Below, one piece after another: positions 27,519 through 53,275 of a DNA stretch of 64,000 bases; within the stretch, counting starts at the first letter, position 1; each line of letters opens with the position of its first letter. The stretch covers positions 1 through 64,000 of IMG/VR virus record IMGVR_UViG_3300036846_000743; one strand, written 5' to 3'. The position numbers and the translations under genes are program-made. Below the pieces are notes generated by a model. The model saw only the letters and a program-made list of their open reading frames with translations, did not search any database and was not told the DNA's origin.

Positions 27519-29459
27519 ATGTCGGTTGGGATCAAGACACCAGGCAAAGATGAACGAGTTGCGGAGCGACGTCTCAGAGAGACAGCCGCGGCACTGGCCG
27601 ATCTCAAGAAAGTCGAGCAAGACGGCCGCGCAATCAGCGACGTCGATCGGATCATCGCGATCCGGAAGCTGTGCGAAGCTGGCTCGATCCACACTCTGGA
27701 ACCGCTTCTGCCGCTCCTGTTCAACCTGAACGGCCGGCCATACAGTCTCTACGACTACTTCCCGTTCAGCCCGGTCTTCCGGACCCGGATGCCAACCAAC
27801 CTGGTCTTGATGACCGGCCGGCAGGTCTCAAAGTCCACATCGATGGCCAGCCATGGCGTGGCCCTGTCCAATTCGATCCCTCACTTCTCGACCCTGTTCG
27901 TCACGCCCCGCTACGAGCAGATTCGCCGGTTCTCGACCGAATATGTCGGCGCCTTCATCAAGCAGTCGCCGGTACGGGACCTGTGGGTCTCGACCGAGAC
28001 CACCGGCAACGTGCTCTTGCGCACGTTTAACAACGGCTCCCGGATGTTCTTCTCGTTCGCGCTGCTCGATGTCGACCGGGTCCGCGGCATCCCCGCCCAG
28101 AAGGTCGGCATCGACGAGGCCCAGGACATGGACCCCGATCACGTCCCCATCATCCGGGAGACCATGTCGGCATCCAAAGAATATGGGATCACCCAGGTTA
28201 CGGGCACGCCCAAGACGCTCGACAACCTCATGCACGGCGAGTGGATGCGGTCGAGTCAGGCTGAATGGTTCACGCCCTGCTTTCGCTGCGGCGCCTGGAA
28301 CATCGCCAGCCTCGAATATCATCTCGAAGCGATGCTGGGCCCGTTTCACGACGATATCTCCGAGGCCAACCCAGGAACGATCTGTCACAAGTGCCGGCGG
28401 CCTATCAACCCACGCTATGGCCGGTGGGTACATCGGCACCCTGATCGCCGCTGGAGCCGGTTAGGGCTGCATGTGCCCCAGCCGATCATGCCCCTGCACT
28501 ATGCGATCCCCAAGAAATGGTCCGAGCTACTCCAGAAACGGGAAGGGGCTGCGAATACGGCCCCACACGTCTTCATCAATGAGTCACTGGGCGAGTCGTC
28601 GGCCACGGGCAATCAGCTGGTCACCTTGCCTGACCTCCAGGAGGCGGCCGAGCTGGACTGGGAGAACAATCCCCTGGAACCGCACCCGGACGTGATCGCA
28701 CGGCTGTCTCGCTACCGGATGATCGTCATGGGGGTCGACTGGGGCGGTGGCGGCGAAGACGGGGTGTCCTTCACCGTCCTGGCCCTGCTCGGGTTTCGCC
28801 ATGACGGCAATATCGACGTGATCTGGGGCCGGCGGCTCCTGAACCCTCACGAGCACATCAAGGAAGCCGAAGAGATCTACAAGTACTACCAGCTGTTCAA
28901 ACCGACTTACATCGCGCATGACTACACCGGGGCCGGAATTCTCCGGGAGACCTTCCTGATCCAGGCTGGAATTCACATCGACCGGATCTTACCGATCCAG
29001 TACGTCCGGTCGGCAACGCACTCGCTCATGACATTTCACCAGGCCACGCCCCAGCACCAGCGATCACGGTATTCGCTGGACAAGACCCGCAGCCTGATCT
29101 ACGTGACCTCGGCGATCAAGCTCAAGATGATCCGGTTCTTCAAGTACGACTACAAGTCCGACGATATACCGGGATTGCTCCACGACTTCCTGGCCCTGAT
29201 CGACGAGAAACGGCCGGGAACCCACGCAGGCGACATTTACCTGATCAAGCGAGCCACCGGCTTCACCGATGACTTTGCCCAGGCAGTTAATATCGGCTGT
29301 GCCACGCTCTGGCATGCCAACGATGCCTGGCCCAACTTCGCCGCCGGCGCCAATTACCGGCTTACTCCGGATCAGGTGCGCCAGGCCGGGAATGTCGATG
29401 TTGGCTGGACTGACGACGATGTCCGTGCTGATGCCGGCGGATATTTCGCGAATCCATGA
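27519..29459 (+). CDS. terL: Terminase large subunit (GpA-like ATPase, zinc finger, RNase H-like nuclease)
   Basis: Walker A GRQVSKST, Walker B VGIDEAQD, coupling motif TGTPKT, CFRC...CHKC, nuclease MGVDWGGG and C-terminal DDFAQA. Confidence 0.85.
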   Translation: MSVGIKTPGKDERVAERRLRETAAALADLKKVEQDGRAISDVDRIIAIRKLCEAGSIHTLEPLLPLLFNLNGRPYSLYDYFPFSPVFRTRMPTNLVLMTGRQVSKSTSMASHGVALSNSIPHFSTLFVTPRYEQIRRFSTEYVGAFIKQSPVRDLWVSTETTGNVLLRTFNNGSRMFFSFALLDVDRVRGIPAQKVGIDEAQDMDPDHVPIIRETMSASKEYGITQVTGTPKTLDNLMHGEWMRSSQAEWFTPCFRCGAWNIASLEYHLEAMLGPFHDDISEANPGTICHKCRRPINPRYGRWVHRHPDRRWSRLGLHVPQPIMPLHYAIPKKWSELLQKREGAANTAPHVFINESLGESSATGNQLVTLPDLQEAAELDWENNPLEPHPDVIARLSRYRMIVMGVDWGGGGEDGVSFTVLALLGFRHDGNIDVIWGRRLLNPHEHIKEAEEIYKYYQLFKPTYIAHDYTGAGILRETFLIQAGIHIDRILPIQYVRSATHSLMTFHQATPQHQRSRYSLDKTRSLIYVTSAIKLKMIRFFKYDYKSDDIPGLLHDFLALIDEKRPGTHAGDIYLIKRATGFTDDFAQAVNIGCATLWHANDAWPNFAAGANYRLTPDQVRQAGNVDVGWTDDDVRADAGGYFANP

Positions 29460-47035: not shown

Positions 47036-47164
47036 GTTTGTCTCCCTGCTGGGTCCCGAGTCTTCAATCCTGGGCTATCCTACAGGGCGACTGCGTGCTG
47101 ATCAACCACGCGCGGTGACTTGCAATAGTTAAAACGAAAGCCAGAAGACCTAGCCGGCACGAGC

Positions 47165-47242
47165 GGGAAAGGCCCTCAAGGGTACGTCGAGGTGGGTGCT
47201 TGGGAAGCACACCCTTCGATCGTAACCCTTGAGGGATTCCCC
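47165..47242. other. Long imperfect intergenic stem-loop
   Basis: CCCTCAAGGGT...ACCCTTGAGGG outer arms (47173-47235) enclose TCGA/TCGA and GTGCTT/AAGCAC inner stems. Confidence 0.6.
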
Positions 47243-47268
47243 CTGAATTCAACCTCGACGCATCGAGG

Positions 47269-48315
47269 CTATGGTCGCGGATCAAGCTGCGACAGTAGTA
47301 AAGCCAACTCGGGATCATCGTTGACACGAAAACGGTTGGTCAAGAATGCCCCGGGAGCATGGGGCGTTGGAACCGAATGCAATGACTCGGGTTCCTTGGC
47401 GCCCCTGCGGACGGGCTCGCACGTGGTGCCGCAGCCACCGCCGAATGCCGTCCAGTTGCCTAGCTGGGCCTCGGCGAGTGGCATATTCACCCGTTGTTCG
47501 TAGGGGATCTCCAGGTGAATGTCGACGGTGCGATCCGGCCCCTGCTCAGACCACATGTTGAGACCGCTATCGATCTTGGGAAGTCTGAGACGAAGTACGG
47601 TGAGAGCCCTGCTCATTCGCGTGAGGTTCCCGCCGCCAACCCGGTAGACGATCTCGTAGGTCCGGTTGTCACGCCAGTAATTTGGCTCTTCGTTGTCCGC
47701 TTGCAGCTGGGGAACCGGATCGGGTATCCGCGCGACCGGCCTCTCGACTTCCTGAGCTGCCGGTATCGGCGGCTCAAGCGTTTCGAGACTGGGCATGCGG
47801 GTGATCACGTTGGCCACTGCGGGCGGACTGGTTACCGGAGGTGCCTCGCGGCTGACCGTGCTGGTCGCGGGCGGGCTGGCTATCACAGGTGTCTCGCTGC
47901 GGGCTGTGTCGACCGCAGCAGGTGGGCTGGTTGCCGCAGGCGCCACGCTGCCAGCCGGGCTGGCCGCAGCAGGCGCACTGGCGATACTCCTCGGGTACAT
48001 CCAGTTCGTGGCGAGCACCACAACAGCGGCACCTGTCAGGATGCCAACGCCATAGGTCCGCAAGACACTGGCGAATGTCGCCCGACGTGGTGCCGGCTGG
48101 ATCACGATCGCAGGGGCAGGATCCAGGATGACCGGATCCGGAACTCCAACAGCCCTGGTATCTTGACCGGATGCAGCTGGCACGTGCTTCTGAAGTCTGC
48201 GCGGCCTTGCCGGCTGCGCAGCTTGCTGTTCGACTGACGCGGCGATCTCTTCGACCGCCCGTGTGAACGAGTCTGAGTCCGGTCCTCCGACCGGTCCTGT
48301 GTTCGAGGCTTTCAT
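47269..48315 (-). CDS. Membrane-anchored Pro/Ala/Thr-rich protein
   Basis: Single TM (YGVGILTGAAVVVLATNW), long low-complexity linker, C-terminal globular region. Confidence 0.6.
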   Translation of the reverse strand: MKASNTGPVGGPDSDSFTRAVEEIAASVEQQAAQPARPRRLQKHVPAASGQDTRAVGVPDPVILDPAPAIVIQPAPRRATFASVLRTYGVGILTGAAVVVLATNWMYPRSIASAPAAASPAGSVAPAATSPPAAVDTARSETPVIASPPATSTVSREAPPVTSPPAVANVITRMPSLETLEPPIPAAQEVERPVARIPDPVPQLQADNEEPNYWRDNRTYEIVYRVGGGNLTRMSRALTVLRLRLPKIDSGLNMWSEQGPDRTVDIHLEIPYEQRVNMPLAEAQLGNWTAFGGGCGTTCEPVRRGAKEPESLHSVPTPHAPGAFLTNRFRVNDDPELALLLSQLDPRP

Positions 48316-48451
48316 GCTTATCTTTCTGTTGGGGTGGGAGACTTGGGTATTGGCAATCTCGTTGTTGGGGATTGGCTTGGTGGCGAACTCAGCGCCGGGT
48401 ATTTCTGCTAAGCGAGTTCTGCGACGTGGAACTTCCAGTAAACAACCGTAT

Positions 48452-48667
48452 TTACTGGTCAACCTTTTCCAGCAGAACCGCGAGCCAACCAGCGGTGACT
48501 TCAATCGACCTCGAATGGGAGTTAGTAGAATGAGCAACACCAGTGGATCCAACGGATGTCATGGACCTAACGATCCAACCTTGTTTGAGTAACTCGGTGA
48601 GATGTTCCTTAACATCTAGCTCGTTGGGTTTCTGCGTAGTAAGCCCGATCGTGATCAGTTTCTGCAC
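48452..48667 (-). CDS. DUF4177-like small protein
   Basis: LTELLKQGWIV...WLAVLLEK; GGAG RBS. Confidence 0.5.
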   Translation of the reverse strand: MQKLITIGLTTQKPNELDVKEHLTELLKQGWIVRSMTSVGSTGVAHSTNSHSRSIEVTAGWLAVLLEKVDQ

Positions 48668-48763
48668 TTCAACATTTCTCCAATGGCCGAACGATAAAGC
48701 TCACTTGTTCGGCCGGCACAAGTGAGCTGTCTAGGACATAGGGTGAGATATAAGAAAAAGGGT

Positions 48764-48795
48764 AAAGACGGCGGCCGTAGTACGCGGCCGCCGTC
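48764..48795 (-). terminator. Hairpin of the AAAGACGGCG family (copy 1)
   Basis: Minus strand GACGGCGGCCGC-GTACTA-CGGCCGCCGTC-TTT. Confidence 0.6.
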
Positions 48796-48811
48796 GTGCA
48801 AACAAGTTAGA

Positions 48812-49141
48812 TCACTTCTTAACGGGTGGTGCCGGAGCAGTCTTGGTTGTCGCTTCAGCCGGAGCCGGAGTGGCAGCCGGAGCAGCGGGCGGAGCAGGAG
48901 CAGCCGGAGCGGCAGTCAACGCAGGAGCGGCCACCTCGTCCACGATGGCGCGGACGATCACAGGCTTGTCATTGGTCGTGATCCTCACGACCTTCCTGCT
49001 GGTATTGGCCGGCACCTTGACCTCCGTCACTGTCGTATTTGTGCCTTCCGGAAAAAGATCCGGATCTCCGGTGCAGCCAACGGCGCCGAGGGTGGCAAAG
49101 ATCAGGGAAACGCACGCAAACCGACTCATGAACTTACGCAT
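48812..49141 (-). CDS. Putative lipoprotein with an Ala/Pro-rich tail
   Basis: MRKFMSRFACVSLIFATLGAVG-C lipobox; AGGAG RBS. Confidence 0.7.
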   Translation of the reverse strand: MRKFMSRFACVSLIFATLGAVGCTGDPDLFPEGTNTTVTEVKVPANTSRKVVRITTNDKPVIVRAIVDEVAAPALTAAPAAPAPPAAPAATPAPAEATTKTAPAPPVKK

Positions 49142-49257
49142 CGAAACTCCTAACGTAGTTGTGGTGGTGAAGCTGCTAACAAGCAGAAGAACCGAAGTTG
49201 GGGAAGTAGGAACGGCGGCTGCAACATGCAGTCGCCAACACTGAGATACACGACGGG

Positions 49258-49587
49258 TCAGCCTCCGGAGTCCGGCGCTGCTTTGTACGCGAGTGCAACT
49301 ATCACCAGGATGATCAACCAACCGAGCCCGTACAGGGCACCGATGAGGATCAGCCCGGAAACCATCAACAGGATGGTGTTTATCAACTTGCTGCGGAGTA
49401 CCCACCGGACCAGTACCATGACTGTCCTGCGCCAGAGCCATGTGGCGCACAGCCAGCGGAAAAAGATCCAGATACTCGCGATGGACGGTGAGAGGGTTAC
49501 GCTTTTACCCCCGACGACGACCACAGGATTGGCTAGAACAGCTGAGACATGAGCGTTGAAGCTGTTTACCTTCCTGTCTTCTTCCAT
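49258..49587 (-). CDS. Membrane protein
   Basis: Probable start MEEDRK; C-terminal hydrophobic helices. Confidence 0.55.
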   Translation of the reverse strand: MEEDRKVNSFNAHVSAVLANPVVVVGGKSVTLSPSIASIWIFFRWLCATWLWRRTVMVLVRWVLRSKLINTILLMVSGLILIGALYGLGWLIILVIVALAYKAAPDSGG

Positions 49588-49610
49588 GGCTTCTTTCGTA
49601 TCGCTGGAAA

Positions 49611-49644
49611 TGAAAGACGGCGACCACAACGAGCGATCGCCGAC
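49611..49644 (-). terminator. Hairpin of the AAAGACGGCG family (copy 2)
   Basis: TGAAAGACGGCGACCACAACGAGCGATCGCCGAC, near-identical to 50227-50260. Confidence 0.6.
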
Positions 49645-49675
49645 ATGATGGTTAGCTGAAGTCCGCACGGTCGGA

Positions 49676-50194
49676 TCAACTCGACCGTGATACGGTAACT
49701 CCATTGATCGTCGCCTCACTGGCAGTCAGCTTCGTGATCGGCGCATTATCGAACACGGTCACGGAATGGGACTTCCAGCAGACAATTGCCCAGACACGCG
49801 TTACATGGGCTGTCAGCTTACCGTCACGGACGCTCCACACGCCCTTGGCGTTACGCGTCGTGAACGTGCCGTCGCGTTTGAGGTCGACGTCGACCATCTT
49901 CCCGTTGACGCACAAGGCGTAGTGACCGGCGCAGTTTTCACTCGTGACCGGCAGCGGGCTGCTCGGAACAACCGTGACTGACAGCTGGCCGCCCGGAACA
50001 ACTTGCATGTTCGCGGAGGAATACGTGCCGCCGATGCGCACGTTGCCGCCTCCAGACGGGAGAGGCCAAGGTTGTTTGATCTCTCCCCCGGCACCGCTAT
50101 CAATCGTGAATTTGCAGCCTGTGGTGGTAGTGAGACCGGCAATCACGCAAGCCAACAAGACGAAGCGCATGAACCGGCCAGTGATCTTTCTCAT
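49676..50194 (-). CDS. Putative lipoprotein, beta-rich
   Basis: MRKITGRFMRFVLLACVIAGLTTTTG-C lipobox. Confidence 0.7.
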   Translation of the reverse strand: MRKITGRFMRFVLLACVIAGLTTTTGCKFTIDSGAGGEIKQPWPLPSGGGNVRIGGTYSSANMQVVPGGQLSVTVVPSSPLPVTSENCAGHYALCVNGKMVDVDLKRDGTFTTRNAKGVWSVRDGKLTAHVTRVWAIVCWKSHSVTVFDNAPITKLTASEATINGVTVSRSS

Positions 50195-50226
50195 CGAAAC
50201 TTTTTCCTTCTACTACGTGTACGAGC

Positions 50227-50260
50227 TGAAAGACGGCGACCGCAACGAGCGATCACCGTC
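50227..50260 (-). terminator. Hairpin of the AAAGACGGCG family (copy 3)
   Basis: TGAAAGACGGCGACCGCAACGAGCGATCACCGTC. Confidence 0.6.
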
Positions 50261-50275
50261 ACTGGAACTTAGTGA

Positions 50276-51190
50276 TCACCAGCTGCGCAGTCCGGGCATG
50301 GCATAGGTCCAGACCAGCCCGCACATGCAGAAGGTGAGGACGGTCAGCCCGAGCAGCCAGCCGACAGATGCCAGCTGCCGCTTCCATGTGACCGTCCTGA
50401 AGTGGCAGGCATTGGTGATGACGTCCATGATGCTGGCGACCAGCAGGGTGACGACCACCAAGGCGACGGCACACACGACCAGGCTCAAAGCATGGGTATA
50501 TACCCACCAGAAAGCAGCTATGACCGCTCGCCAGTAGAGCATGCCGGCACAAACGACGACGGCAGCCGCCACAAAGGCGGCAGCACCGAGCATGAATTGC
50601 TTAAACCATGAAGGGACCTTGCCCAACCCCAACCATACCTTGAAACCATCGATCTTGGTCCAGAACTTGCCGGCCAAGTTCGGCAGATACAATGGCGGTG
50701 GTGGACCCGGTGGACCCGGTGGAGCCGGTGGAGTCGGTGGAGCCGGTGGGATTGGCGGACCCGGCGACGGACTCGGCGATAGGCCCGGGAAAGCCGCCAC
50801 GGCTGCCGCCATGGCTGCCGCCATAGGATCGACAGCTGGCGGACCCGGAGGGGCTGGAGACGGAGCTGAAGCCGGAGCTGGCGGAGCCGCAGCAGCCGCC
50901 AACGCTAACATAGCCGTCTGGACAATCGCCTTGAGATCGCTGACTTCCTTGGCGAGTGCCTCGATGTCCTCGATCTTGACGGTCCTTTGGTTTGAAGCCG
51001 TCGGCGTTGAGTTCGCTGTCTTAGCTCCTCCTGCCTTCGCCGACGGCTTTGCTCCCGACCCTGCCACAGGTACCTGAACTGGTGCCTGCGCTGGTGCCTG
51101 AGCTGGTATCGGAGCCGGTATTGGAGCAGAATTAGCAGGTTGCCCATTAACGGGCACTGGGGGTGAAGCGGTCTGGGCCGCTGTACTCAT
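50276..51190 (-). CDS. Pro/Ala-rich membrane protein with three C-terminal TM helices
   Basis: Low-complexity Pro tracts, a short coiled coil and a hydrophobic C-terminus; AGGAGG RBS. Confidence 0.7.
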   Translation of the reverse strand: MSTAAQTASPPVPVNGQPANSAPIPAPIPAQAPAQAPVQVPVAGSGAKPSAKAGGAKTANSTPTASNQRTVKIEDIEALAKEVSDLKAIVQTAMLALAAAAAPPAPASAPSPAPPGPPAVDPMAAAMAAAVAAFPGLSPSPSPGPPIPPAPPTPPAPPGPPGPPPPLYLPNLAGKFWTKIDGFKVWLGLGKVPSWFKQFMLGAAAFVAAAVVVCAGMLYWRAVIAAFWWVYTHALSLVVCAVALVVVTLLVASIMDVITNACHFRTVTWKRQLASVGWLLGLTVLTFCMCGLVWTYAMPGLRSW

Positions 51191-51210
51191 GGAAAGAACC
51201 TCCTGATATT

Positions 51211-51240
51211 TGTTGGGGATCTGTTGGGGTTTTGTTGGGG
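51211..51240. repeat. Triple tandem TGTTGGGG (CCCCAACA on minus), period 11
   Basis: TGTTGGGGATC-TGTTGGGGTTT-TGTTGGGG, directly upstream of the RBS of 51190. Confidence 0.8.
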
Positions 51241-51388
51241 ATCAAACAAGGCAATGCACAAGGCCGCCGCCTACTTCAACTCATTCCTCCGCTCCCCCCA
51301 ACAACAAGAGTAGAGAAGGAGGAGCCGGCGGCGGCCCCTGTACGGGGCGTATGTGGGTGGTGATCGGGTTGACTCGAACCGGAGCAGG

Positions 51389-51754
51389 TTACTTCGCTAT
51401 GCCGCCGCCAGGACCTTTCGGTTCCTGCGTATTGACATGAGCGAGCCTGTCCCGCATGTCCTCGAACAGACCTGCGAGCTTATCCACCTGGGAGGTGACA
51501 GCTTCCTTCGAGGTGTGGATGATCTCCGCAGACTTGCGAGCGTCTCCAGCGTTGTCAGCAGCCCGGCTCGCTTCATCCTGGGCTTCCTGAACCAACTTCA
51601 CGATCTTCTCCATGGCCTTCTCGGCCGCATGAGCCTGGCTCTGGGCCGCCCTCGCGGCATCCCAGGCTTCCTGGTTGTAATGCCACTGAACACAGCTGAT
51701 GACCACCATGAGAACGATCATGGCGGCGACGGAATGCTTCTTGACGAAATTCAT
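51389..51754 (-). CDS. Membrane-anchored coiled-coil protein
   Basis: N-terminal TM/signal, then an Ala/Glu-rich helix; AGGAG RBS. Confidence 0.65.
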   Translation of the reverse strand: MNFVKKHSVAAMIVLMVVISCVQWHYNQEAWDAARAAQSQAHAAEKAMEKIVKLVQEAQDEASRAADNAGDARKSAEIIHTSKEAVTSQVDKLAGLFEDMRDRLAHVNTQEPKGPGGGIAK

Positions 51755-51904
51755 CTGCGCATACTCCTAGCTTGGTAGTTGGGGAACGAACACTGACTGG
51801 GGACGTGGACCGACCGAGCGATTGACATTCCCTCCGTCATGCGACGGAAGAAAGGGAACCGGCCGGCCCACGCTTACGGTTGGGGAACTAACAATCGAAC
51901 CTGG

Positions 51905-52207
51905 TCAGGAGCGATACTCTACCAGCCGATGAGCAGGAAGCTGCTCGAGAATATCGGACGGTAGGTATTCGCATTCGGGCAACAGCCCATCCCCGACATC
52001 CGGCGTAGCATCGAGGTCTTGTCCAGTGACCTCGCCGGCACACAGAGAGCAGAGCCACACGGTGAACTCCTCACCCGCGACTACCAGCAACACGACATGA
52101 GTCGCGTCGAGGTCTCCGCACTGCGTACAGGAACAACAGGAACACTCTGGCACACAGTCAACGATCCAGGCGTCGCTGTCGACATCTGGTTGAAGACGTC
52201 CTTTCAT
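51905..52207 (-). CDS. Cys-rich hypothetical protein
   Basis: CSCCSCTQC...CSLC...CEY. Confidence 0.5.
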   Translation of the reverse strand: MKGRLQPDVDSDAWIVDCVPECSCCSCTQCGDLDATHVVLLVVAGEEFTVWLCSLCAGEVTGQDLDATPDVGDGLLPECEYLPSDILEQLPAHRLVEYRS

Positions 52208-52282
52208 TTGCTGGACTCCCTGCTACGATCACCATGCTTCCGGGCACGATGCCAGCGATCCACAACCTATGTAGATCAACGC

Positions 52283-52311
52283 TATATGACAGGAATCTGG
52301 GCGAAATTTAG
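52283..52311 (-). promoter_or_regulatory. Candidate phage promoter CTAAA-N16-GTCATATA
   Basis: Minus strand GCTAAATTTCGCCCAGATTCCTGTCATATA, intergenic, upstream of 52207. Confidence 0.6.
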
Positions 52312-52323
52312 CGCCCAGAAACG

Positions 52324-52367
52324 AAACGGCCCGGCTTGGAGGCAAACCTCCGGGCCGGGCCATTTTC
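52324..52367. terminator. Terminator-like hairpin after the PEP-CTERM gene
   Basis: GGCCCGGC-TTGGAGG-CAAA-CCTCC-G-GGCCGGGCC flanked by A and T runs. Confidence 0.6.
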
Positions 52368-52393
52368 AGCAGGATAACGTGGTAGCGCGTTGC

Positions 52394-53092
52394 TTACGCC
52401 TTGCGGACGGACCTGCGGAAGTACCGTCTGTAGGCGAGCACACCAGTGAGCCCGATGCCCATCAGGGACATCGAGGCAGGCTCAGGCACGGCCTGCTGCG
52501 AGAAACTACCGTTAGCGACGATCGTCGAACCTGGCGTCGCGAACAACCCGGCAAAGCTATTGATCCCCCCACCGAAGGTAGTTCCGGTAAAGGTGAAGTT
52601 GATATCGCCGCCCTTGGCAAACAGCGAGTAGTCAAACCGTGGGTTGTCGTTCTCGATCAGACTGACGATCTTGCCGCTCATATTGAAAAAGTTGGGCAAA
52701 ACGGTCGGGGCAACACCAGTCGTGGCGGTGAACGTCAGCATCGCTTCAGCGCCCGGCACGTCGCCAACGGTCTTGGTATAGGTTGATGGCGACAGCGCCA
52801 ACGAGTAGGTCTCCGAGCCAGTAGGCGTCACCAACAAGGTGATCGGCCCGTTGACCGAGATCGGCTCAGGTGTCAGCAGTGACACGCCGTTGACCGTGTT
52901 CACCTGACTGAACAGATTGGGTATCCGCGCGATCTCGATCGTCGCGGTACCTCCCGAGATCCCCATGTTCGTCAGCTCGACACCGCCGATCGAACCGGAG
53001 TCGCTGAACACCACGGTACCGGCTTGCGCCGATCCCAGGCCGGCGATCGCAGCGACCAAAGCCATGGCAAAACAGAGAGAACGCATCTTCAT
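52394..53092 (-). CDS. PEP-CTERM (exosortase-targeted) cell-surface protein
   Basis: Signal peptide MKMRSLCFAMALVAAIAGLGSAQA; Thr/Ser/Gly-rich body; C-terminal VPEPASMSLMGIGLTGVLAY-RRYFRRSVRKA. Confidence 0.9.
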   Translation of the reverse strand: MKMRSLCFAMALVAAIAGLGSAQAGTVVFSDSGSIGGVELTNMGISGGTATIEIARIPNLFSQVNTVNGVSLLTPEPISVNGPITLLVTPTGSETYSLALSPSTYTKTVGDVPGAEAMLTFTATTGVAPTVLPNFFNMSGKIVSLIENDNPRFDYSLFAKGGDINFTFTGTTFGGGINSFAGLFATPGSTIVANGSFSQQAVPEPASMSLMGIGLTGVLAYRRYFRRSVRKA

Positions 53093-53180: not shown

Positions 53181-53209
53181 TATATGACAGGCAGACGGCC
53201 GAAGTTTAG
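53181..53209 (-). promoter_or_regulatory. Candidate phage promoter CTAAA-N16-GTCATATA
   Basis: Minus strand GCTAAACTTCGGCCGTCTGCCTGTCATATA, upstream of the PEP-CTERM gene. Confidence 0.6.
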
Positions 53210-53275
53210 CCCCTTGTCCGCCTATCTGGACGGCCGGCCAGGCTGTTGCTTCTTTCCGACACGTGTGACCGCCGC

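What the first reader, a model, noticed from the sequence alone, without database searches (positions are those of the whole stretch)
47269..53092. Cluster of phage-encoded envelope proteins: candidate host-surface remodelling island
Seen: within ~6 kb, two lipoproteins with lipoboxes, four TM-anchored proteins (two with long Pro/Ala linkers) and a PEP-CTERM protein. None resembles lysis enzymes. Inference: a system that decorates or alters the infected cell surface (superinfection exclusion, receptor masking, adhesion), possibly glycosylated by the phage GT/MT/sulfotransferase set.
Basis: partly seen in the sequence, partly recalled or inferred. Interest (0 to 1): 0.6.

Follow-up and report, generated by a model that had tools for sequence, protein, structure and literature searches.

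The report
Variable envelope-protein island of a jumbo phage
A 226-kb soil phage carries a real, tightly packed set of membrane, lipoprotein and surface-sorted proteins, but it is a patchwork that changes between related phages, part of it looks like cell-bursting (spanin) equipment rather than surface decoration, and one gene is a host-type surface protein that needs the host's own sorting enzyme.

Summary
On the minus strand, 47269-53092 encodes eight genes. Seven carry envelope-targeting signals: one signal peptide plus PEP-CTERM (H), two lipoproteins (B, D) and four TM proteins (A, C, E, F). G is a cytoplasmic Cys-rich Zn-ribbon protein.

The genome is a complete 226-kb soil phage; one bacterial homologue context suggests a Planctomycetota host.

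The genes are not conserved as a block. They fill a hypervariable slot between conserved core genes, and five related lineages carry different subsets.
- F (N-terminal TM plus a Pro-free helical rod; weak Rz-like spanin hits) and B (small Pro-rich lipoprotein) are adjacent in relatives. They are best read as an i-/o-spanin pair, split here by an insertion carrying E, D and C.
- H is a confident beta-barrel with PEP-CTERM. The family also occurs in bacterial chromosomes, other mobile elements and small phages. The phage has no exosortase.
- A belongs to a new bitopic family with a Pro-rich linker and a ferredoxin-like C-domain.
- D, E and C had no detectable homologues in the searches run.
- A, B, E and F share a 5'-UTR word complementary to the apex of a conserved hairpin. 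The word differs, with its complement, in five lineages.

No endolysin was found, and expression could not be tested. The surface-remodelling reading is partly supported: for H, perhaps D.

The parts
52394..53092 (-). H: secreted beta-barrel protein with a C-terminal PEP-CTERM sorting signal (232 aa)
   Evidence: PF07589 above the gathering score. 79 homologues. AlphaFold model with pLDDT 90.5, all-beta barrel plus a C-terminal helix. Best fold matches are soluble 8-10-strand barrels, Z 9.1 or less. Present at the same slot in L001, L002/L006 and L005; absent in L008.
53181..53213 (-). Promoter-like element about 90-120 nt upstream of H (CTAAA..GTCATATA type)
   Evidence: 33-nt repeat shared with the G upstream region. 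Only three full copies in the 226-kb genome. The GTCATA(T/C)A core is also seen upstream of the first island gene in L001, L002, L005 and L008.
52283..52315 (-). Second copy of the same promoter-like element, upstream of G
51905..52207 (-). G: 100-aa Cys-rich (CxxC..CxxC) Zn-ribbon-like protein, probably cytoplasmic
   Evidence: Sequence. Weak zinc-finger hit. Homologues at 30-38% identity in L001, L005 and L008.
51389..51754 (-). F: candidate i-spanin (N-terminal TM segment, about 85-residue Pro-free Ala/Glu/Lys/Gln-rich helical region, conserved GPxGG end)
   Evidence: TM segment. No Pro in residues 25-110. phrog_312 Rz-like spanin at E 1.9e-4 plus three more spanin PHROGs. The two homologues also top-hit spanin PHROGs. 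Alignment A8.
51259..51340 (-). Conserved long hairpin in the F-E spacer. Its left arm is CU-rich (anti-SD-like). Its apex carries a G-rich word complementary to words downstream.
   Evidence: MFE folds. RNAalifold basal stem of 15 pairs, 4 of them compensatory. Apex-to-downstream-word complementarity of 9-11 nt in five lineages with five different words. No Rfam family.
51212..51248 (-). Three tandem copies of the C-rich word (CCCCAAC[A]) just 5' of E's Shine-Dalgarno. Single copies lie upstream of F (51785), B (49204) and A (48371, 48334), and one lies after G (51886).
   Evidence: 8 of 17 minus-strand CCCCAAC in the whole genome fall in this 3.6 kb, all intergenic. The copies elsewhere were inspected and none lies in a comparable position just 5' of a ribosome-binding site.
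50276..51190 (-). E: 304-aa protein with a Pro/Ala-rich N-terminal 190 aa and 3-4 C-terminal TM segments
   Evidence: No Pfam/PHROG hit, no tblastn match in related loci, no Atlas hit.
49676..50194 (-). D: 172-aa lipoprotein with no homologues found; its C-terminal half is lipocalin-like
   Evidence: Lipobox pattern at Cys27. No homologue among 5.8 billion proteins. Atlas model TM 0.4-0.6 to lipocalin-like clusters and 'putative lipoprotein' features at 0.86.
49258..49587 (-). C: about 109-aa multi-TM protein (start uncertain), of holin-like size
   Evidence: Hydropathy maximum 2.74. No family hit. Relatives carry different small 2-3-TM proteins in the island.
48812..49141 (-). B: candidate o-spanin (lipoprotein, Cys23; mature 86 aa with 15 Pro and 19 Ala)
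   Evidence: Lipobox. Homologous to the small lipoprotein immediately downstream of the F homologue in L002/L006 (tblastn E 6e-7; alignment A9).
47269..48315 (-). A: 348-aa bitopic protein (N-terminal region, one TM segment, Pro/Ala linker, about 100-aa ferredoxin-like C-domain)
   Evidence: Profile search found 20 relatives, most with the same architecture. Model core pLDDT 85-90, beta-alpha-beta-beta-alpha-beta. Only generic ferredoxin-fold matches. A-like genes are in L001, L005 and L008.
48762..50261 (-). Four related terminator-like hairpins, one after each of E (50227-50261), D (49611-49645), C (49206-49240) and B (48762-48796)
   Evidence: the repeat finder family D2; the copies after E and D are 91% alike. 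One was called as a terminator-like site.
47036..47268 (-). Conserved non-coding boundary of the island: hairpins, then a sigma-70-like promoter for the downstream core operon
   Evidence: Read by eye from the spacer sequences of the window, L002, L005 and L008. My regex for the exact promoter form found no match. Not tested further.

Best explanation
The stretch is the variable 'envelope island' of a complete ~226-kb soil jumbo phage whose host is probably a member of Planctomycetota. It is a mosaic of independently transcribed small cassettes in a fixed slot between conserved core genes. It is not one machine.

(1) H is a host-type secreted beta-barrel with a PEP-CTERM signal. After Sec export the host's exosortase would cleave it and pass it to the cell surface or exopolysaccharide layer. 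The phage has no exosortase of its own. H has its own promoter-like element and behaves as a moron exchanged among bacteria, small phages and this lineage. Its likely effect is to change what the infected cell shows on its surface.

(2) F plus B are a two-component spanin. F is anchored in the inner membrane and extends a helical rod. B is an outer-membrane lipoprotein with a Pro-rich mature part. Joined end to end, they would bridge the periplasm and fuse the two membranes as the last step of lysis. In relatives the two genes are adjacent. Here a 2.2-kb insertion (E, D, C) separates them.

(3) A, E, C and D are envelope proteins of unknown role:
- A: bitopic, Pro-rich linker, ferredoxin-like domain.
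- E: Pro/Ala-rich, multi-TM.
- C: small multi-TM, holin-sized.
- D: lipocalin-like lipoprotein.

A, B, E and F share a 5'-UTR word complementary to a hairpin apex. I therefore take them to be co-regulated, most likely as a late envelope-disruption or lysis-control set.

Shown: the targeting signals, the mosaic distribution, F-B homology and adjacency in relatives, the spread of the H family, and the motif sharing.

Inferred: spanin function, exosortase processing, timing, and any role for A, C, D and E.
For: Phage identity:
- TerL, RNR and an Ant-like protein.
- Single 226,073-bp record, CheckV 100% complete.

Host:
- The H homologue P0071 lies on a 1.76-Mb contig among PSCyt1/PSCyt2/PSD1/DUF1501 genes.

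Mosaic slot. Flanking genes are 59-79% identical in the related contigs, while the content differs:
- window: H, G, F, E, D, C, B, A
- L001: H, G, A-like, two TM ORFs
- L002/L006: H, 2-TM ORF, 94-aa ORF, F, B
- L005: H, G, A-like
- L008: G, A-like, 2-TM ORF

Spanin reading:
- F has a TM segment and a Pro-free helical region.
- The top PHROG hits of F and of both its homologues are Rz-like spanins (E 1.9e-4, 9e-4, 8e-3).
- B is a Pro-rich lipoprotein homologous to the lipoprotein 28 bp downstream of the F homologue in L002.
- The combined periplasmic length, about 180 residues, lies inside the published 62-300 range (PMC6139136).

H:
-.
- Bacterial contexts.
- Other mobile or viral contexts.
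- No exosortase in the phage.

Separate cassettes: large spacers, each with a related terminator-like hairpin.

Shared word.
Against: - Spanin homology is weak. All E-values are above 1e-4, and such hits are typical of coiled-coil composition.
- B has no family hit.
- F and B are 2.2 kb apart in this genome, and even in L002 a terminator-like hairpin lies between them.
- Neither has the conserved periplasmic Cys common in spanins.
- The complex test gave no verdict.
- No endolysin was found in 12 Pfam families, so there is no lysis-cassette context.
- C lacks the charged C-terminal tail typical of holins.
- Three lineages lack F and B at this slot. The two whose whole records could be searched (68% and 78% complete) also lack F elsewhere.
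- The host assignment rests on one bacterial contig.
- No RNA data exist.
Confidence: 0.5

Rival explanations
1. One reading: the genes together form one system that remodels the surface of the infected cell (superinfection exclusion, receptor masking or adhesion). Lipoproteins and TM proteins would block or mask receptors, and H would be displayed outside.
For: - Seven of eight products are envelope-targeted.
- H is a host-type surface protein.
- Phage lipoproteins such as T5 Llp and Cor are known exclusion factors (my knowledge).
- H and G carry a promoter-like element of a rare class, with only three full copies in the genome.
- No lytic enzyme lies nearby.
Against: - Not conserved as a block: D, E and C had no detectable homologues, and relatives carry other subsets.
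- F and B have spanin anatomy and are adjacent in relatives.
- No hit to any exclusion family in PHROGs.
- Each gene has its own terminator-like hairpin.
Confidence: 0.2
2. Apart from H and G, the whole island is the phage's lysis cassette. C and/or E's TM part would be the holin, F and B the spanin, A a peptidoglycan-binding or lysis-control protein, and D an accessory lipoprotein. The endolysin would be of an unrecognised type or encoded elsewhere.
For: - Small 2-3-TM proteins with charged tails sit in the same slot in L001, L002 and L008.
- L002 has the order 2-TM, N-anchored 94-aa, F, B, which resembles holin / antiholin / i-spanin / o-spanin.
- A, B, E and F share a regulatory word.
- A has the TM / Pro-rich linker / small alpha-beta domain layout of FtsN-type SPOR proteins (the comparison is from my knowledge).
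Against: - No endolysin here or anywhere in the genome in 12 families.
- No holin family hit.
- A's domain matches only the generic ferredoxin fold, and SPOR is not detected.
- C lacks a charged tail.
- L005 has only H, G and A-like at this slot.
Confidence: 0.2
3. The proteins are virion or injection components, for example membrane-interacting ejection proteins or parts of an internal lipid layer.
For: The window contains the large terminase subunit at 27519-29459. Jumbo phages carry many unknown structural proteins (my knowledge).
Against: - Lipobox and PEP-CTERM signals direct proteins to the host envelope through host machinery, not to capsids.
- The content varies between close relatives whose flanks are about 75% identical.
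- No structural PHROG hit beyond weak coiled-coil noise.
- The neighbours are an AAA ATPase, DUF2997 and DUF3150, not structural genes.
Confidence: 0.05
4. Several of the ORFs (C, E, and perhaps the N-terminal part of A) are not real genes but chance frames in a GC-rich variable spacer.
For: GC3 of A, B, E and G is 0.54-0.67, against 0.75-0.87 in the flanking genes. D, E and C have no homologues anywhere.
Against: - AGGAG-type ribosome-binding sites stand before B, D, E, F and G.
- Ordered signal, TM and lipobox features sit at the N-termini.
- Each ORF is bracketed by the shared word upstream and a hairpin downstream.
- A, B, F, G and H have homologues.
Confidence: 0.07

Closest known systems
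Two-component spanins (lambda Rz/Rz1; 'separated' architecture as in T4 PseT.3/PseT.2; Kongari et al. 2018, PMC6139136)
   Same: - F is a type-II inner-membrane protein with a helical periplasmic domain.
- B is a small Pro-rich lipoprotein.
- In relatives the two genes are adjacent in the order i then o.
- The combined periplasmic length is within the published range.
- F and its homologues top-hit Rz-like PHROGs.
   Different: - Homology is only weak.
- The genes are separated by three inserted genes here.
- No periplasmic Cys.
- No neighbouring holin or endolysin.
- The host envelope (Planctomycetota) is unusual.
- Binding was not demonstrated (no verdict).
PEP-CTERM/exosortase substrates (Pfam PF07589; Haft et al. 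2006, cited from memory)
   Same: H has an N-terminal signal peptide. At its C-terminus it has the VPEP motif, a hydrophobic helix and a basic tail. It scores above the Pfam cut-off.
   Different: - It is encoded by a phage that lacks an exosortase.
- The passenger is a compact beta-barrel with no known family.
- In the papers searched I found only one mention of a PEP-CTERM protein on a virus-like element (bioRxiv 10.64898/2026.09.15.751708).
Phage morons and superinfection-exclusion lipoproteins (T5 Llp, phi80/N15 Cor; from my knowledge)
   Same: Small, independently transcribed envelope-targeted genes, each with its own terminator, in a variable slot. B and D are lipoproteins.
   Different: No sequence or family match. 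No receptor is known. B has a conserved partner, F.
FtsN-type bitopic SPOR-domain proteins, and TonB (architecture only; from my knowledge)
   Same: A has a cytoplasmic N-terminus, one TM segment, a long Pro-rich periplasmic linker and a small alpha-beta C-terminal domain with beta-alpha-beta-beta-alpha-beta order.
   Different: No SPOR or TonB_C Pfam hit. The fold search returns only generic ferredoxin-like folds at Z 8.6 or less. In L001 the Pro-rich part lies before the TM segment.

Membership tests
i-spanin (two-component spanin, inner-membrane subunit) | N-terminal transmembrane domain, N-in/C-out | tested here: met
   F residues about 6-27 are hydrophobic, preceded by KK. Conserved in the homologues.
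i-spanin (two-component spanin, inner-membrane subunit) | Periplasmic domain dominated by alpha-helix or coiled coil | tested here: inconclusive
   No Pro and 2 Gly in residues 25-110, rich in Ala/Glu/Lys/Gln. Weak hits to coiled-coil families. No structure model was made.
i-spanin (two-component spanin, inner-membrane subunit) | Sequence membership in a known spanin family | tested here: inconclusive
   phrog_312 at E 1.9e-4, phrog_89 at 9e-4, phrog_214 at 8e-3. All weak. No GenBank phage match.
o-spanin (outer-membrane lipoprotein subunit) | Lipoprotein signal with a lipobox and no inner-membrane retention residue | tested here: met
   B has AVGC at Cys23 with Thr at +2. L002 has TIGC with Asn at +2. 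The retention rule for this host is unknown.
o-spanin (outer-membrane lipoprotein subunit) | Gene embedded in, overlapping, or directly downstream of the i-spanin gene | tested here: not met
   In the window, B starts 2.2 kb downstream of F with E, D and C between them. The feature is met in L002/L006, where the spacer is 28 bp.
Two-component spanin complex | The subunits bind through their C-terminal ends | tested here: inconclusive
   The complex prediction gave no verdict.
Two-component spanin complex | Periplasmic cysteines for intermolecular disulfides (common, not universal) | tested here: not met
   Neither F's periplasmic part nor mature B has a Cys.
Two-component spanin complex | Needed for outer-membrane disruption at lysis | not testable with these tools
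   Needs a lysis or complementation assay.
PEP-CTERM/exosortase substrate | C-terminal PEP motif, TM helix and basic cluster | tested here: met
   PF07589 at 26.7 bits, cut-off 20.7. 31.2 bits in the six-frame search. Conserved across the family.
PEP-CTERM/exosortase substrate | N-terminal Sec signal peptide | tested here: met
   A basic n-region (Lys/Arg), then a hydrophobic core and a conserved AQA|G site, in 33 aligned homologues. Helix 3-17 in the model.
PEP-CTERM/exosortase substrate | An exosortase (EpsH) in the same cell | tested here: inconclusive
   None in the phage genome. No host genome is in hand, so the host enzyme could not be checked.
Holin | Small protein with at least one TM domain and a charged cytoplasmic C-terminus, next to an endolysin | tested here: not met
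   C has TM segments but ends in KAAPDSGG. No holin family hit. No endolysin found.
SPOR-domain division proteins (for A) | SPOR domain detectable by sequence or fold | tested here: not met
   No Pfam hit. Only generic ferredoxin-fold matches.

The most novel reading that the evidence does not exclude
The island is run by a phage-private riboregulator. The apex of a conserved hairpin would base-pair with short words placed just 5' of the ribosome-binding sites of several envelope genes (A, B, E and F here). Word and apex have changed together in five lineages. This would form a small post-transcriptional regulon that times envelope remodelling and lysis. The same island delivers a substrate (H) for the host's exosortase, so the phage would re-dress the surface of a Planctomycete cell through a host sorting pathway.
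Probability: 0.25. Interest if true: 0.75.

Novelty: new variant of a known kind. Interest (0 to 1): 0.5.

Why it matters
- No Planctomycete phage has an experimentally described lysis system, as far as I know, and these bacteria have an unusual envelope. A spanin pair in such a phage would show that the two-membrane fusion step also applies there.
- A phage-borne PEP-CTERM protein that depends on host exosortase would be a new route by which phages alter the host surface.
- The H family moves between bacterial chromosomes, small phages and jumbo phages, which suggests it is under conflict-driven exchange.
- The A-type family and the covarying hairpin/word pair are both undescribed, and both can be tested.
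- The result also cautions against reading a dense cluster of membrane proteins as one system.

Tried and rejected
- Complex prediction of F (residues 28-121) with B (23-109): no verdict, so no evidence either way.
- Homologues of H in GTDB representative genomes: two scans found nothing, so no named host.
- GenBank phages: no DNA match and no protein match for H or F.
- Endolysin search in 12 Pfam families: nothing except a sub-threshold M23 hit at 117 kb. The families were Phage_lysozyme, SLT, Amidase_2, PG_binding_1, M15_4, GH19, Lysozyme_like, GH108, M15_3, M23, NlpC/P60 and GH25. For GH19 and GH108 the control genomes did not ring either.
- Rfam: no family in the region.
- RNA runs: only the source soil DNA run holds the sequence.
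- E as the N-terminal half of A-like proteins: only compositional similarity. Rejected as unsupported.
- HYR-repeat protein P0088 among the A-domain hits: treated as a partial or spurious match.
- Ends of the record flagged 'provirus' (G002): no host genes seen.
- ESM Atlas fold library: not available.
- Cluster look-up: gave no names.
- D: no homologues.
- E's TM part: no Atlas hit.

Full report
WHAT THE WINDOW IS. The window is the first 64 kb of a single 226,073-bp virus record, rated 100% complete by CheckV. It has about 60% G+C and nearly all genes lie on the minus strand. It encodes a large terminase subunit, a ribonucleotide reductase and an Ant-like protein. It has no near relative among 50,697 GenBank phage records. 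The only public run that holds the stretch is a soil metagenome DNA run, probably its source. No RNA run holds it.

THE OBSERVATION. Eight minus-strand genes fill 47269-53092.

- H (52394-53092) has a signal peptide and a PEP-CTERM tail that scores above Pfam's cut-off.
- G (51905-52207) is a Cys-rich Zn-ribbon-like protein with no convincing membrane segment.
- F (51389-51754) has an N-terminal TM segment, then about 85 residues without proline.
- E (50276-51190) is 15% Pro and 20% Ala, with 3-4 TM segments at its C-terminal end.
- D (49676-50194) and B (48812-49141) match the PROSITE lipoprotein pattern at Cys27 and Cys23.
- C (49258-49587) is a small multi-TM protein.
- A (47269-48315) has one TM segment, a Pro/Ala linker and a C-terminal domain.

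B, D, E, F and G have AGGAG-type ribosome-binding sites. In a crude screen about 12% of genes genome-wide have a hydrophobic window. Seven of eight in a row is therefore far beyond chance.

NOT A CONSERVED BLOCK. Five related lineages were recovered:

- L001/L009 (141-kb contig)
- L002 (231-kb contig) and the very similar L006 (212-kb contig)
- L005 (246-kb contig)
- L008 (161-kb contig)

The flanking genes are syntenic. The AAA ATPase and the 252-aa and 162-aa proteins are 63-79% identical; the 93-aa protein is 59-64% identical.

Between the 105-aa upstream core gene and the 93-aa downstream core gene, the content differs:

| Lineage | Content of the slot |
|---|---|
| window | H, G, F, E, D, C, B, A |
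| L001 | H, G, an A-like 445-aa ORF, a 100-aa multi-TM ORF, a 145-aa TM ORF |
| L002/L006 | H, an 84-aa 2-TM ORF, a 94-aa N-anchored ORF, F, B |
| L005 | H, G, A-like |
| L008 | G, A-like, a 117-aa 2-TM ORF (no H) |

D has no homologue among 5.8 billion proteins. E and C have no homologue in any relative. The island has lower G+C than its flanks, large spacers, and a related terminator-like hairpin after each of E, D, C and B. This is the anatomy of a hypervariable slot filled with separate cassettes.

F AND B. F has only one homologue cluster in the large protein collection, and that homologue lies in the L002/L006 type. There the next gene, 28 bp downstream, encodes a small lipoprotein. Its mature part has 44 residues, 8 of them Pro, and it is homologous to B (tblastn E 6e-7; alignments).

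F and its two homologues each give an Rz-like spanin PHROG as their top hit, though weakly (E 1.9e-4, 9e-4, 8e-3). The following features match the published description of two-component spanins of the 'separated' class (PMC6139136):

- a TM anchor plus a helical rod in one protein
- a lipobox plus a Pro-rich mature part in the other
- the gene order, i-spanin then o-spanin
- a combined periplasmic length of about 180 residues

Against this reading:

- The hits are weak.
- The two genes are 2.2 kb apart here.
- Neither protein has a periplasmic cysteine.
- A hairpin lies between the genes even in L002.
- The complex test gave no verdict.
- No endolysin was found in 12 families.
- F is absent from the two relatives whose whole records could be searched, which are 68% and 78% complete.

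I put the spanin reading at roughly 0.55-0.6.

H. The family has 79 members at E below 1e-3 and aligns end to end. The model is confident (pLDDT 90.5): an all-beta barrel between the signal peptide and the PEP-CTERM helix. Foldseek found nothing useful. The wide structural search gave soluble 8-10-strand barrels at Z 9.1 or less, which is close to background: an uncharacterised Shewanella protein, pyocyanin demethylase, Diels-Alderases and dirigent proteins.

The gene contexts of H homologues are mixed:

- A 1.76-Mb bacterial contig with PSCyt1/PSCyt2/PSD1/DUF1501 genes. As far as I know these families are greatly expanded in Planctomycetota.
- Three tandem copies on what looks like a bacterial contig, and a chromosomal site near adenylate kinase and MreB.
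- A transposon-rich region with glycosyltransferases.
- A different phage-like or mobile element.
- Three unrelated IMG/VR contigs, one of them a 37-kb virus rated 98% complete.

In a maximum-likelihood tree the four jumbo-phage copies fall into two well-supported clades that also contain other sequences. The gene at this slot has therefore been replaced, or acquired more than once.

The phage has no exosortase, so H must rely on the host's. A second PEP-CTERM ORF lies at 128695-129189 of the genome.

A. A profile of the C-terminal domains of the four A-like proteins found 20 relatives among 1.84 billion representatives. Most have the same layout: a charged N-terminus, a TM segment, a Pro-rich stretch and the domain. 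None of those scanned has a Pfam family, apart from a HYR-repeat protein that I take to be a partial match. The model core is confident and has beta-alpha-beta-beta-alpha-beta order. The only matches are generic ferredoxin-like folds. The architecture recalls FtsN-type SPOR proteins or TonB, but membership of either is not supported.

D, E, C. The Atlas model of D places a lipocalin-like barrel in its C-terminal half, at low TM-scores. E and C have no family hit. Relatives carry other small 2-3-TM proteins with charged tails in the slot. These are holin-like in form only.

SHARED REGULATORY FEATURES. The word CCCCAAC occurs 17 times on the minus strand of the genome. Eight of these lie in 48.3-51.9 kb, all intergenic: three upstream of E, one each upstream of F and B, two upstream of A, and one just after G. 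I inspected the copies elsewhere. None lies in a comparable position just 5' of a ribosome-binding site.

In the F-E spacer a long hairpin (51259-51340) carries the reverse complement of that word at its apex. Every relative has the same layout before its first island gene after the hairpin, but with a different word and a matching complement. The complementarity is 9-11 nt and perfect in all five lineages. Shuffled downstream sequences reached the observed length in 0-3% of trials in each lineage. In L001, however, the automated split picked a stem word, so that pair was read by eye.

RNAalifold supports the basal stem with 15 pairs, 4 of them compensatory. Rfam has no such family. Either RNA-RNA pairing or one DNA site used in both orientations could explain this. 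The words sit directly 5' of the ribosome-binding sites, which favours RNA. Either way, A, B, E and F appear to be co-regulated.

H and G instead carry a promoter-like element with only three full copies in the genome. The third stands before a 32-aa hydrophobic ORF at 119649.

VERDICT. The cluster is real and unusual, but it is a mosaic:

- a probable spanin pair, split by an insertion
- a host-type exosortase substrate
- a new bitopic family
- three genes with no detectable homologues

The surface-remodelling idea is supported for H, and perhaps for D. It is not supported for the cluster as one system. Glycosyltransferases and sulfotransferases exist in the genome but lie far away. Expression, lipidation, binding and host identity remain untested.

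Noticed in passing
window 51259-51340 (hairpin) and 51212-51248, 51785, 49204, 48371, 48334 (words); L001 5251-5378, L002 10853-10979, L005 11251-11396, L008 6949-7093: A conserved hairpin has an apex complementary (9-11 nt) to words placed just 5' of the ribosome-binding sites of island genes. Word and apex differ together in five lineages. No Rfam family. Either RNA pairing or a DNA site used in both orientations could explain it.
   Followed up: partly
window 50227-50261, 49611-49645, 49206-49240, 48762-48796: A family of related GC-rich terminator-like hairpins, one after each of E, D, C and B. The copies after E and D are 91% alike, which suggests cassette-wise gain of these genes.
   Followed up: partly
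window 53181-53213 and 52283-52315; genome (G000) 119557-119747 (+), outside the window: A promoter-like element (CTAAA..GTCATATA) has only three full copies in the 226-kb genome: before H, before G, and before a 32-aa hydrophobic ORF followed by a hairpin.
   Followed up: partly
genome (G000) 128695-129189 (-) and 131269-132345 (-), outside the window: A second PEP-CTERM ORF (30.2 bits) with no obvious signal peptide from its first start. About 2 kb away lies an N-anchored protein with a Lys/Pro/Glu-rich TonB-like linker.
   Followed up: no
window 47036-47268; L002 12323-12693; L005 12540-12990; L008 8990-9283: The non-coding boundary between the island and the downstream core operon is conserved. 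It has a short hairpin, a longer hairpin, then a sigma-70-like TTGATC / TGTAGGAT promoter. This may be a structured RNA or a recombination boundary.
   Followed up: no
H family tree (alignment A2): The jumbo-phage copies of H at the same slot fall into two well-supported clades that also contain sequences of unknown or other mobile-element context. The gene has been swapped or acquired more than once.
   Followed up: yes
window 49119-49148 and 50172-50201: B and D share their ribosome-binding region and first codons (77% over 30 nt; MRK..RF), although their mature parts are unrelated. This suggests a reused signal-peptide cassette.
   Followed up: no
window 48316-48811 (ORF 48452-48667): The 496-bp B-A spacer holds a 71-aa ORF with a possible ribosome-binding site, low GC3 (0.54) and no homologue in the related loci. 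Coding status unknown.
   Followed up: no
whole genome G000 and relatives G001, G002: No endolysin was detected with 12 common Pfam families. There is only a sub-threshold M23 match in a 670-aa frame at 117112-117273. The muralytic enzyme of this lineage is unidentified.
   Followed up: partly
   Followed up: partly
L004 9086-9397 and the context of P0032: In two bacterial contexts the H homologue is preceded by a divergently transcribed 103-aa gene. This may be a conserved partner in bacteria that the phage lacks.
   Followed up: no
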